Shown here: positions 47,134 through 49,525 of the stretch, in pieces | How positions within the stretch are numbered: the first letter of the stretch is position 1 | Layout: each line of letters starts with the position of its first letter | Source: Ruditapes philippinarum | Lineage: Eukaryota | DNA length: 64,000 nt | Assembly: GCF_026571515.1 (NCBI RefSeq) | Contig: NW_026852031.1 | Coordinates: 434,001-498,000, forward strand | Direction of reading: 5' to 3' | Program-made: the position numbers and the translations under genes | Notes under the pieces: generated by a model | What the model was told of the DNA's origin: nothing | The model's database searches: none | Seen by the model: only the letters and a program-made list of their open reading frames with translations

Positions 47134-47405
47134 CCCCCCGTTGGGCGCCAATGTCTAAGGGTGAGACAAATTGTGCAGCCTGACCGGGACTCAACCCGGG
47201 ACCCACGGAATACCGTACCGCGGCTCTACCGACTGAGCTATCCGGCCGCTTACACAACATCTCCCCGATATAGTGAACAGTTCTGAACCGTGACAAATTC
47301 CCCTGCTATATTGAAATTCGTTCTCCAATCGAATTTTACAGAGTTACAGAGCAATGTAAATGAAACTCTGAGCTATATGCAGTCACGAGCCCACGTTGAG
47401 CGCCA
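47134..47405 (-). mobile_element. TRIM-like unit (PBS - ~80-bp spacer - PPT - 144-bp tRNA-containing mini-LTR - second PBS)
   Basis: Mini-LTR 47152-47295 (TGTC...GACA), PPT AGGGGAATT at 47304-47296, PBS TGGCGCCCAACGGGGGG at 47150-47134, tRNA-like segment 47247-47176. Confidence 0.75.
47176..47247 (-). ncRNA. tRNA-Lys-like (pseudo-tRNA) Pol III promoter sequence inside the mini-LTR
   Basis: GGCCGGATAGCTCAGTCGGTAGAGC...GGGTTGAGTCCCGGTCAGGCTG. A-box intact, B-box lacking one base, anticodon arm non-canonical. Confidence 0.7.
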
Positions 47406-49525
47406 TTTGTCGCAGTCCAAAAGATAAGGATGTCTATTGGACGCTGTGGGTTAAGATACTTGGGACCTGGACAGTGTATTTCAAATATTTTCAGGGGCTT
47501 TGATTGGTATTTAAAGAAGGAGGAACAGCTATATTGTTTTAATTGTCTTCCGCACGTTTAAATACGTTGTATATCATTTACAAGTATTAGCATTCATAAA
47601 TGCTTGGAATCGCCGTTCAGCCATGAATATAGAAATAATATTTCATTTCTTGCCAAATACCTTTATTGTGTGTGGTCAACACATAAAGCCAACAAAAATA
47701 CTTGATTTACTCTACAATTCCGTTCTAGACGTGCTCAGTTATATTCTGAGATATTTTTTTGTTCTGGATCAGAATGTAGGAGATATTGCCCATAAGAAAA
47801 ATATCACAATTACTAAACGCGTAGTACAATTAGTTAGACTACATGCGCCACTAAATCGGTGGATCAATCGGCAAAAATTAATAGGCTTCTTGCGTAATTA
47901 ACAACAGATTAAAAATGATGTCTGTGAACATTCTATATTCTATCAAATCATCCGCAAATGATTACATCCGCAGATGATTACTAAAAAAGGAGGCGTCTCC
48001 TGTATGATATTTACAGATAACTAATCTCGTAGCAGTTTTACACGATGGTTTATTTAATGTGTACTTTAAATGATCAGGATTTAAATGATCCGGGCCAGCG
48101 CCCAAAAATATGATGGTATCAACGGGTTGAAATTAATGTCGTCACGAAATATGTCATTTTCTATAGACATTTGTTTACACTATTTACTCAACTTTATTTG
48201 CTTGCCAAACATGTCAACTCTGTTTTACATGTAGTATGAAAGAAACACACCTTTCGCTAATGACTAAAGGATATGATTGAAATACATGCTTTAAAGAGGA
48301 AAAGCCGAACATCAACTCATTGAGTAGTATATAAACAAAACTGTATATAATGTATGAGCATTTCCAAAAATGCTAGGAATCGCCGTTTAACCGGGTATTC
48401 GAAAAATATCTTTTTGGTGTGTGGAATATACTCCTTCCGAAACAATAGAGCTAATGTTTCTTCTTTTGATATTACATGTATTGTTTACCACATAGGTTTC
48501 GAGCTGCTTACAAGATAATATTTATATTATAGATATAGGTAACCCTAGAAAAACAAGGCGGGTGGCGTGTCCCGTAGGCGTCCCTTTTGTGGTCTTTTGT
48601 TGCCCATTTTGCATTTTGTTATCATGTGGTACGTATCAAATTCTCCTTTTTGATAGGCTTTAGGGAAGGCGATGAACGATAGAAATGGTTGTATATGTCG
48701 CCGTCCTGAAACGGAGAAAATAATATTGAAAGCAATGATAGTACGTTACAGGAGCAAAAAATTCAATATTAAATATTTAAATTATAGAAAATGTTTACTT
48801 GTTTGCTGTATTTCGTAAAACAATTCTTTTGCTATTAATAGCGACAGTTGATCAAGTGAAGACGTAAGGGCGTGTTATCAGGTTAAATCAGCACTGATAA
48901 TGATAACGTTTCTGATTTCAAAGAATTAAATTATATTTTATCTTTGAAGAAAATAATGGTGTTATCGATATTCCAAAGTACAATAAGTATAATGTACACT
49001 GTACTTATACTTATATAAACCGTTTATCGTTACAATTTTAATATAAACAGGGTGTTGAGGAGAGAAAACAAATGTAAGTTTATAGTGTTATATGATAAAT
49101 ATATTTTCTTTCTCTTTTTCTGTTGTACCAAAATATTTTTTTCTATAAAGTATGTGCAAGCATCTCTTCAGTTTATTCTTTATACATTGTTCTTATATTC
49201 CTTTGCTTTCACGTCCCTTTCAAAATTTACATTTATAGAACTGTGTAGTGAAATCTCGTGTAATACGTGCACACAAGCAATTATGCCAGAAAAAGATAGA
49301 ATGAGCAATTTTTCATGACTGTATTAGTAGTAATTTAATGAATTAGTCTATAATTAAATGTTTGTAATAAAATAATTATAATGTTGATAGTATTTAGAAT
49401 AAGATATAAAAACAAACCACGAAAGAGTTATATAGGGATCTGGTTGACCCGTGTGAGATACATGATACATGATGTATAACTATATTTCGCTATATGTGTT
49501 TATGATTTGTACAGAATGATACAAG

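What the first reader, a model, noticed from the sequence alone, without database searches (positions are those of the whole stretch)
47134..47468. tRNA-promoter mini-LTR retroelement hitchhiking between the 5' LTR and gag of a Gypsy element
Seen, on the minus strand: host 5' LTR end (47468-47408), tRNA-Lys PBS (47405-47386), ~80-bp spacer, PPT (AGGGGAATT), a different 144-bp LTR (47295-47152) holding a tRNA-Lys-like A/B-box sequence, a second tRNA-Lys PBS (47150-47134), then host leader/gag. The mini-LTR mimics the host LTR tips (GAACCGTGACA vs GAACCTGTGACA; TGTC start) but is otherwise unrelated. No TSD flanks the unit; the PBS itself is what is duplicated. Established: TRIMs with Pol III small-RNA sequences in their LTRs exist (5S-bearing Cassandra; tRNA-bearing TRIMs named Helenus, from memory). 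Inference: this is a satellite element that entered its helper by PBS-homology template switching during reverse transcription rather than by integration. It would then be copied inside the helper genome, could regenerate free TRIMs, and supplies an internal Pol III promoter upstream of gag. A directly captured parasite-helper pair like this may be undescribed.
Basis: partly seen in the sequence, partly recalled or inferred. Interest (0 to 1): 0.82.

Follow-up and report, generated by a model that had tools for sequence, protein, structure and literature searches.

The report
tRNA-bearing mini-retrotransposon fused into its helper
A 254-base piece of a tiny parasitic retrotransposon carrying a tRNA-like sequence (a Helenus-type TRIM) sits exactly at the primer-binding site of a defective copy of a large retrotransposon, and other hybrids in the genome point to that large family as the one whose machinery copies the parasite.

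Summary
On the minus strand, 47295-47152 is a 144-bp LTR of an abundant TRIM. Free copies are 394 bp (LTR, about 106 bp of internal sequence, LTR) with 4-bp TSDs, and there are solo LTRs and tandem arrays. The LTR holds a tRNA-like sequence (Rfam tRNA, 38-44 bits), so this is a Helenus-type element, a kind already described in bivalves.

47405-47296 is the TRIM's own internal region, not host sequence. One internal+LTR unit therefore lies between two copies of an 18-nt tRNA-Lys PBS, without a TSD. Ordinary host copies go straight from LTR to PBS to leader.

New evidence:
- About 10 loci join a host LTR to TRIM internals, roughly as many as join it to host internals.
- Three such hybrids have perfect 4-bp TSDs, and the crossover lies inside the PBS.
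- The reciprocal junction (TRIM LTR, PBS, host leader) occurs at 3 loci, in different host lineages.

Best reading: strand transfer or template switching at the shared PBS inside shared particles.

- The RT/IN genes in the window belong to a different, nested element.
- This host copy is dead and its 5' LTR is truncated.
- Nothing shows that the composite propagates.

Read-level checks were unavailable. The scan did not report this before on other DNA.

The parts
47408..47468 (-). Last 61 nt of the host-family LTR (5'-truncated 5' LTR), followed by a 2-nt spacer at 47407-47406
   Evidence: 60 of 61 nt identical to the end of the 3' LTR at 38070-38010. No further LTR homology upstream: local alignment score 21 against a shuffled mean of 19.7.
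47296..47405 (-). TRIM internal region: tRNA-Lys-type PBS (47405-47388), about 80-nt spacer, PPT-like AGGGGAA (47304-47298)
   Evidence: 88-90% identical over positions 1-107 to TRIM internals at 40 scored loci, with 1345 first-look candidates. TRIM-specific bases (CGTGACTG) follow the PBS.
47152..47295 (-). 144-bp TRIM LTR (TGTCAC...AGACA), acting here as the shared middle LTR
   Evidence: Full-length matches at 93-94% identity; 2399 first-look candidates. Canonical copies are LTR-internal-LTR with 4-bp TSDs.
47176..47247 (-). tRNA-like sequence inside the TRIM LTR (A box intact, B box with a 1-nt deletion, downstream T5 run lost)
   Evidence: Rfam RF00005, 38.4 bits, E 9e-7. Canonical copies score 39-44 bits and are called as tRNAs by ARAGORN. 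Differences from other copies are shown.
47133..47150 (-). Second tRNA-Lys-type PBS, the host element's own
   Evidence: Sequence read. The same 18-nt PBS follows the LTR in normal host copies and in TRIMs.
46851..47132 (-). Host-family leader
   Evidence: 85-87% identical to the sequence that directly follows LTR+PBS in C6867, C15073, C5067, C10825 and C15456.
46707..46850 (.). Small inverted-repeat (MITE-like) insertion in the host leader
   Evidence: Absent from other host copies. Its ends at 46707-46758 and 46800-46851 are an inverted pair of a high-copy repeat.
45825..46706 (-). Host internal region, continued (no long ORF)
   Evidence: 87-91% identical to L063, L064 and L066. No open frame over 59 aa in the first 1.8 kb after the PBS in any host copy.
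41471..45824 (-). Nested LTR retrotransposon of another family, carrying the RT and integrase ORFs of the window
   Evidence: Other host copies jump from 45825 to 41455. LTRs of 173-177 bp at 45824-45652 and 41647-41471, with a CTTAG TSD. It is its own dispersed family, with LTR pairs 3.6-4.5 kb apart. RVT_1 and rve domains found.
38347..41470 (-). Rest of the host internal region: gag-like ORF at 40021-39587, a 630-bp repeat block at 39549-38511 where pol should be, then 170 nt and the PPT
   Evidence: 41455-40884 matches other host copies, and 38516-38347 matches the region before their 3' LTRs. Weak PNMA and Retrotrans_gag hits, below the Pfam cut-offs. Repeats found.
38010..38346 (-). Host 3' LTR (337 bp, TGTCAC...GCGACA), preceded by the PPT GAGGGGAAGGA

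Best explanation
What it is. The 144-bp element is the LTR of a Helenus-type TRIM: a 394-bp non-autonomous LTR retrotransposon whose LTRs carry a tRNA-derived sequence with A and B boxes. In the window, one TRIM internal+LTR unit (254 bp) lies between two copies of the 18-nt tRNA-Lys PBS of a defective member of an LTR-retrotransposon family of about 8.5 kb. The layout is host LTR (truncated), PBS, TRIM internal, TRIM LTR, PBS, host internal, host LTR. This is a 'complex element' with three LTRs in which parasite and helper share the middle LTR.

How it most likely arose (inferred). TRIM RNA and host-family RNA were packaged in the same particle. Minus-strand synthesis on the host RNA reached the PBS and switched, through the identical 18-nt PBS, onto a TRIM RNA. 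It copied the TRIM U5-R, made the TRIM's own R-mediated jump, and copied U3, PPT and the internal region back to the TRIM PBS. The host plus-strand strong-stop DNA then completed the 5' end.

The same PBS-mediated transfer in trans explains the commoner hybrids elsewhere. Host strong-stop DNA landing on finished TRIM minus strands gives host LTR, TRIM internal, TRIM LTR; these hybrids were then integrated with 4-bp TSDs.

Consequence. This host family, or a very close relative, is the TRIM's helper. In this particular copy the unit is a fossil with no evident function.
For: Shown:
- TRIM structure, 4-bp TSDs, solo LTRs and arrays of up to 6 LTRs.
- tRNA match in the LTR.
- 47405-47296 is the TRIM internal region.
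- Normal host copies have LTR, 'AT', 18-nt PBS, then leader, with nothing between.
- The host LTR to TRIM internal junction occurs at 10 loci (window, C507, C4950, C8571, C3264, C9089, C8234, C9489, C5554, C8718), against about 11 loci with the normal junction.
- Three of four such hybrids in hand are flanked by perfect 4-bp TSDs: TGTA, CACA and ATAC. Each was therefore integrated as one cDNA with unlike LTRs.
- In these hybrids the host-type spacer 'AT' precedes the PBS and TRIM-specific bases follow it, which places the crossover within the PBS.
- The hybrids carry different host LTR variants, with one, two or three copies of an 89-bp segment.
- The reciprocal junction (TRIM LTR, PBS, host leader) occurs at 3 loci, in separate host lineages; support for the young clade that excludes the window copy is 99/96.
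- Host and TRIM share an identical PBS, 12 of 13 nt at the 5' tip of the LTR, and similarity next to the PPT, z about 3.
- Some host copies keep an open integrase C-terminal frame of 275-289 aa, and the young host clade is 95-99.5% identical.

Established knowledge: the retroviral strand-transfer scheme, and template-switch 'complex elements' with flanking TSDs (PMC1950507).
Against: - No TSD test is possible for the window copy, because its 5' host LTR is cut to 61 nt.
- No reads could be laid on the junctions.
- The exact order of switches cannot be read from a finished product.
- In C8718 and C632 the spacer after the TRIM LTR is host-type 'AT'. In all three reciprocal junctions the last 8 nt of the TRIM LTR are altered. 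A clean transfer of TRIM strong-stop DNA does not predict either feature.
- Only about 90 loci could be fetched, so the counts are lower bounds taken from the best-scoring candidates.
Confidence: 0.7

Rival explanations
1. Recombination at the DNA level. A one-LTR circle of TRIM cDNA (LTR plus internal, about 250 bp), or a genomic TRIM, crossed over once with the resident host element through the 18-25-nt PBS homology. This inserted internal+LTR and duplicated the PBS.
For: A single crossover of a one-LTR circle gives exactly the observed order with a duplicated PBS and no TSD (reasoning from the layout). The same process could add 250-bp units to TRIM arrays.
Against: Eighteen nucleotides is very short for homologous recombination. 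It cannot explain the TSD-flanked elements with a host LTR at one end and a TRIM LTR at the other, which need a chimeric cDNA. Once such cDNAs are known to form, this extra mechanism is unnecessary.
Confidence: 0.13
2. The TRIM unit is a heritable passenger of a host sublineage that is copied with it and spreads, with the internal tRNA-like promoter possibly active.
For: Three loci carry TRIM LTR, PBS and host leader. All three share an altered TRIM LTR end that is invariant in 27 other LTRs, which could reflect common descent.
Against: The full composite (host LTR, TRIM internal, TRIM LTR, PBS, leader) was found only in the window. The window copy and the C8718 copy lie in different host lineages, with unmodified copies nested between them. 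The window copy is dead, and its B box and terminator are damaged.
Confidence: 0.1
3. Assembly artefact: a contig joined wrongly through the shared PBS or repeats.
For: Both partners are repeats, and the junctions lie in an 18-nt stretch common to both. No read-level check was possible.
Against: The same junction types recur at more than 10 other loci on other contigs, several with clean TSDs. The window copy carries its own private substitutions on both sides of each junction.
Confidence: 0.04

Closest known systems
Helenus (TRIMp3), tRNA-bearing TRIMs of pteriomorph bivalves and other taxa (Kojima 2024, PMC10886601)
   Same: Two short LTRs with a tRNA-like sequence that keeps the A and B boxes. 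PBS and PPT lie between them, with no coding capacity. TSDs are 4 bp, as in animal Helenus. The PBS is tRNA-Lys-type and begins TTTGGCGCCCAACG, as in several oyster Helenus families (supplement read). Solo LTRs and tandem arrays occur.
   Different: The dimensions (144-bp LTR, about 106-bp internal, 394 bp in all) match no family in that paper's Table S1, so this is probably a further family. That paper infers helpers only from PBS similarity. Here, physical hybrids with one autonomous-type family exist.
Complex LTR-retrotransposon insertions made by abnormal template switching (Sabot and Schulman 2007, PMC1950507)
   Same: Three LTRs and two internal domains share a middle LTR. The outer LTRs are alike. 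The structure is explained by switching between two co-packaged RNAs.
   Different: In that work both partners are copies of one autonomous family, and flanking TSDs were shown. Here the partners are a 394-bp parasite and a member of its helper family, the middle LTR is unrelated to the outer ones, the switch point is the PBS, and the TSD of the window copy cannot be tested.
Chimeric and tandemly arranged TRIMs in plants (sugar beet survey, PMC13570524; Cassandra arrays cited there)
   Same: LTRs are donated between families. Tandem arrays keep their TSDs. Template switching is invoked.
   Different: As far as I read, those chimeras are between non-autonomous families. None involves a TRIM with a Pol III promoter joined to its autonomous-type partner, and none is from an animal.

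Membership tests
Helenus (TRIM with tRNA-derived LTR sequence) | A tRNA-like sequence inside each LTR | tested here: met
   RF00005 at 44.5 and 39.3 bits in the two LTRs of L002. ARAGORN hits in both LTRs of 5 copies. Window copy 38.4 bits.
Helenus (TRIM with tRNA-derived LTR sequence) | Two LTRs with PBS and PPT between them; short; no ORF | tested here: met
   LTR 144 bp, internal about 106 bp, LTR 144 bp, 393-395 bp in all, in 9 two-LTR copies (8 distinct loci). TGTCAC...GTGACA ends, PBS 2 nt after the LTR, and AGGGGAGTA before the 3' LTR.
Helenus (TRIM with tRNA-derived LTR sequence) | 4-bp TSDs in animals | tested here: met
   All 9 two-LTR copies checked (8 distinct loci; L017 and L023 are overlapping cuts of one C6889 copy), one solo LTR and one 3-LTR array have perfect 4-bp TSDs.
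Helenus (TRIM with tRNA-derived LTR sequence) | Functional Pol III promoter (transcription from the A and B boxes) | not testable with these tools
   Canonical copies have the A box TAGCTCAGTCGG and B box GGTTCGAGTCC, with a T5 run after the tRNA-like part.
Template-switch complex element (Sabot and Schulman type) | Three LTRs and two internal domains sharing the middle LTR | tested here: met
   Host LTR fragment, TRIM internal, TRIM LTR, host internal, host LTR.
Template-switch complex element (Sabot and Schulman type) | Flanking TSD around the whole complex | tested here: inconclusive
   The 5' LTR is truncated to 61 nt, so its outer edge is gone. Related two-LTR hybrids elsewhere do have TSDs.
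Template-switch complex element (Sabot and Schulman type) | Outer LTRs near-identical (a single reverse-transcription cycle) | tested here: inconclusive
   60 of 61 nt identical over the part that remains. The other 276 nt are absent.
Ty3/Gypsy (host family) | pol with RT before integrase, and Gypsy-clade RT | not tested
   Only the ends of intact host copies could be fetched. Their 3' ends encode an integrase C-terminus just before the PPT. Homologues are mollusc retroelement integrases, many with the PF17921 zinc-binding domain. The RT in the window belongs to the nested element.

The most novel reading that the evidence does not exclude
Strand transfer in trans through the shared PBS may be so frequent in this genome that about half of all host-type 5' LTRs lead into TRIM internals. 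The genome would then hold a natural record of co-packaging that names the helper of a Pol III-promoter TRIM for the first time. It would also show a kinetic bias. Host strong-stop DNA, made early, lands on TRIM minus strands that finish long before the host's own 8-kb strand. This would explain why host LTR to TRIM hybrids (about 10) outnumber the reciprocal form (3).
Probability: 0.45. Interest if true: 0.62.

Novelty: new variant of a known kind. Interest (0 to 1): 0.5.

Why it matters
How TRIMs with Pol III-type promoters (Cassandra, Helenus, Ajax) find and keep a helper is an open question. For Helenus the only published clue is PBS similarity to some Gypsy families (PMC10886601).

Hybrids with one LTR from each partner, clean TSDs and a crossover inside the PBS are physical evidence of three things: the two RNAs were reverse-transcribed together, one integrase accepts both kinds of LTR end, and the shared PBS is a recombination point.

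That makes the helper question testable in this bivalve, by looking for these junctions in particle-associated or extrachromosomal cDNA. It also gives a simple genomic signature for finding TRIM helpers in other genomes.

The window's own copy is an inert fossil.

Tried and rejected
- Whole-window ARAGORN and Rfam at gathering threshold found no tRNA. The hit appears only when the region is searched alone, so the first blank was a filter effect.
- I looked for more of the host 5' LTR upstream of 47468. None exists in the window, and the apparent AAAATATTTGAAA resemblance is at chance level. 47580-47900 is another high-copy repeat.
- Idea rejected: the LTR break at -61 marks a special boundary because C8718 breaks at about -70. 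The C8718 LTR is simply split by a 1.77-kb insert, so I treat the similarity as coincidence.
- Idea not confirmed: the two head-to-head reciprocal hybrids in C8718 were integrated together with a CATG TSD. An exact-pattern search gave no hit on that contig. This is inconclusive, since a single mismatch would hide it.
- TRIM internal against host leader beyond the PBS: no similarity.
- Pfam on the open frame after the TRIM LTR + PBS in L006: nothing.
- Table S1 of the Helenus paper lists no family of 393-395 bp.
The alignment is shown against one natural copy.
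Full report
**1. What is in the sequence**

All features are on the minus strand.

- 47468-47408 is the last 61 nt of an LTR whose full 337-bp copy (TGTCAC...GCGACA, preceded by the PPT GAGGGGAAGGA) lies at 38346-38010. 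The two match at 60 of 61 positions.
- A 2-nt spacer follows, then a tRNA-Lys-type PBS from 47405, about 80 nt of spacer, and a purine run AGGGGAA at 47304-47298.
- Next comes a 144-bp TG..CA unit at 47295-47152, one T, a second PBS at 47150-47133, and then sequence that other copies of the 337-bp-LTR family carry directly after their PBS.
- The stretch 47247-47176 scores 38.4 bits on Rfam's tRNA model, against a gathering score of 29, when searched locally. Whole-window scans missed it.

**2. The mini-LTR is a Helenus-type TRIM**

- The 144-bp unit has 2399 first-look candidates in the 1.4-Gb genome. The scored ones match over the full length at 93-94% identity.
- In the loci fetched, the standard element is LTR (144), internal (about 106), LTR (144), 393-395 bp in all. 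There are also solo LTRs and head-to-tail arrays of up to six LTRs with a 250-251-bp period.
- All nine two-LTR copies checked (eight distinct loci, since L017 and L023 are overlapping cuts of one C6889 copy), a solo LTR and a three-LTR array have perfect 4-bp TSDs.
- Both LTRs of canonical copies are called as tRNAs by ARAGORN, with inconsistent anticodons (Pro, Gln, Thr). They score 39-44 bits on RF00005.
- Canonical copies have an intact A box, the B box GGTTCGAGTCC, and a T5 run after the tRNA-like part.
- The paired LTRs of single elements differ at 0-3 positions, so the family was active recently.

These are the defining features of Helenus (Kojima 2024, PMC10886601). That paper reports Helenus from five orders of pteriomorph bivalves, with 4-bp TSDs and, in some families, a tRNA-Lys PBS beginning TTTGGCGCCCAACG. 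No family in its Table S1 has these dimensions. The TRIM as such is therefore a further member of a known kind.

**3. What the unit in the window is**

The 110 nt between the host LTR end and the TRIM LTR (47405-47296) are not host sequence. They are the TRIM's internal region, 88-90% identical to TRIM internals elsewhere.

Ordinary copies of the host family read LTR, 'AT', 18-nt PBS, then leader, with nothing between (C6867, C15073, C5067, C10825, C15456 and others).

The window copy thus carries exactly one TRIM internal+LTR unit (254 bp) between two copies of the PBS, with no TSD. The full layout is host LTR, PBS, TRIM internal, TRIM LTR, PBS, host internal, host LTR. Three LTRs and two internal domains share the middle LTR. 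This is the 'complex element' pattern that Sabot and Schulman explained by template switching between co-packaged RNAs (PMC1950507), here with unlike partners.

**4. Correction: who the host is**

Comparison with other host copies shows that their internal sequence runs, in window coordinates, 47132 to 46851, then 46706 to 45825, then straight on to 41455 and downward.

- 46850-46707 is a small inverted-repeat insert.
- 45824-41471 is a nested LTR retrotransposon of another family. It has LTRs of 173-177 bp, a CTTAG TSD and a PPT. Its family is dispersed, with LTR pairs 3.6-4.5 kb apart.
- The RT and integrase ORFs of the window (RVT_1 and rve) lie inside this nested element. They are not the TRIM host's genes.
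- The host copy keeps a gag-like ORF at 40021-39587, whose Pfam hits are weak and below cut-off. It has a 630-bp repeat block where pol should be.
- The host copy is dead, and its 5' LTR is cut to 61 nt.

The host family itself is about 8.4-8.7 kb, judged from LTR pairs. It has an ORF-free leader of at least 1.8 kb in every copy examined. In C15073, C15456 and C2369 it keeps an open integrase C-terminal frame of 275-289 aa just before the PPT. The homologues of that frame are mollusc retroelement integrases, many with the PF17921 zinc-binding domain. Integrase at the end of pol fits Gypsy (or BEL), but the RT of the host family could not be fetched.

**5. Other hybrids in the genome: the key evidence**

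(a) Host LTR joined to TRIM internal occurs at 10 loci: the window, C507, C4950, C8571, C3264, C9089, C8234, C9489, C5554 and C8718. About 11 loci have the normal host junction.

(b) Four such hybrids are in hand. They are host LTR followed by one to three units of TRIM internal + TRIM LTR. Three of them have perfect 4-bp TSDs: TGTA, CACA and ATAC. The fourth has a damaged 5' tip. An element with a full host LTR at one end, a full TRIM LTR at the other and one TSD must have been integrated as a single chimeric cDNA. DNA recombination between separate insertions would not keep the TSD.

(c) In these hybrids the spacer after the host LTR is the host's 'AT' (TRIMs have 'TT'), and the bases right after the PBS are TRIM-specific. 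The crossover therefore lies inside the 18-nt PBS, which is identical in the two families.

(d) The hybrids carry different host LTR variants and different numbers of TRIM units. An element with unlike LTRs cannot copy itself faithfully, because a replication cycle makes both LTRs alike (established retroviral scheme). They are therefore best read as separate events.

(e) The reciprocal junction (TRIM LTR, PBS, host leader) occurs at three loci: the window, C8718 and a fragment in C632. A tree of about 1.2 kb of host leader puts C8718 inside a young clade (95-99.5% identity, support 99/96) together with unmodified copies. The window copy sits in an older lineage. This junction therefore arose at least twice.

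(f) Host and TRIM also share 12 of 13 nt at the 5' tip of the LTR, the terminal GACA, and similarity in the roughly 45 nt before the PPT (z about 3). They share nothing else.

**6. Mechanism (inferred from the established strand-transfer scheme)**

The common hybrids fit plus-strand strong-stop DNA of the host (LTR + spacer + PBS copy) annealing to the PBS end of a TRIM minus strand in the same particle.

The window's three-LTR form fits the following sequence:
1. The minus strand on host RNA switches at the PBS onto a TRIM RNA.
2. It copies the TRIM U5-R and makes the TRIM's R-mediated jump.
3. It copies back to the TRIM PBS.
4. It is completed by host strong-stop DNA.

The same process on TRIM RNAs alone would give the tandem arrays.

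A kinetic bias may explain why host LTR to TRIM hybrids outnumber the reverse. Host strong-stop DNA is made early, while the host's own acceptor end appears only after about 8 kb of synthesis. TRIM minus strands finish within about 250 nt. This last point is my inference.

**7. Rivals and gaps**

- A one-LTR TRIM circle crossing over at the PBS would also give the window's layout. It cannot give the TSD-flanked hybrids, and it needs recombination on only 18 nt of homology.
No second composite was found, and the window copy's B box (1-nt deletion) and T5 run are damaged.
- Misassembly is unlikely, given the recurrence on other contigs.
All counts come from the best-scored candidates and are lower bounds.
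- Unexplained: all three reciprocal junctions have 2-3 changes in the last 8 nt of the TRIM LTR, a stretch invariant in 27 other LTRs. Two of them carry the host-type spacer.

**8. Verdict**

The host annotation and the 'hitchhiking' consequences do not hold.

The TRIM is a known kind (Helenus). Template-switch complexes and LTR swapping are known from plants (PMC1950507, PMC13570524). In the papers I could search, I found no report of physical hybrids between a Pol III-promoter TRIM and its autonomous-type partner with PBS crossovers and TSDs. Such hybrids identify the helper directly. Interest is moderate.

Noticed in passing
window 41471-45824 (minus strand): Nested LTR retrotransposon of about 4.35 kb, with 173-177-bp LTRs (TGTAATATG...ATATTACA), a CTTAG TSD, and broken RT and integrase ORFs. 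Its family is dispersed, with LTR pairs 3.6-4.5 kb apart, which is unusually short for an element that carries pol.
   Followed up: partly
window 46707-46851: MITE-like insert of about 145 bp in the host leader. Its 52-nt ends form an inverted pair, and the same ends occur as close inverted pairs on many contigs.
   Followed up: no
window 38511-39549: A 630-bp repeat block (1.6 units, 95-97% identical) sits where the host element's pol should be. Another note of this scan (s1-805809) flags it as a candidate structured-RNA mobile element.
   Followed up: no
host-family LTRs, e.g. L040:1501-2012, L043:1501-2188: Host LTRs come in variants with one, two or three copies of an 89-bp segment (LTR positions 177-265), giving LTRs of about 340, 515 and 690 bp.
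   Followed up: no
L062-L068, first 1.8 kb after the PBS: Every host-family copy examined has no open frame longer than 59 aa in the first 1.8 kb after the PBS. That is an unusually long non-coding leader for an LTR retrotransposon.
   Followed up: partly
L041/L064 (C8718:49600-52000): A host LTR, PBS, TRIM internal hybrid lies on the minus strand, its LTR split by a 1.77-kb insert. It abuts head-to-head, with a 5-nt overlap, an element on the plus strand made of TRIM LTR, PBS, host internal and host LTR. Both reciprocal recombinant types are thus at one locus.
   Followed up: partly
L006:1501-2972 and L008:1501-3144: A TRIM LTR plus an 18-nt PBS is followed by unrelated DNA. In L006 an open frame of at least 281 aa, rich in charged residues, starts about 470 nt later and has no Pfam hit. 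These could be strong-stop-like units or hybrids with other tRNA-Lys-primed elements.
   Followed up: partly
window 47152-47159; L064:1475-1482; L083 near 1601-1608: The last 8 nt of the TRIM LTR are changed in all three loci where the LTR is followed by the host leader. They are invariant in 27 other TRIM LTRs.
   Followed up: partly
window 47575-47900: Another high-copy repeat (783 first-look candidates, 77-92% identity) ends about 100 nt upstream of the truncated host LTR.
   Followed up: no
window 40284-40665: A perfect (100%) 180-bp tandem duplication with a 202-bp period lies inside the host internal region.
   Followed up: no
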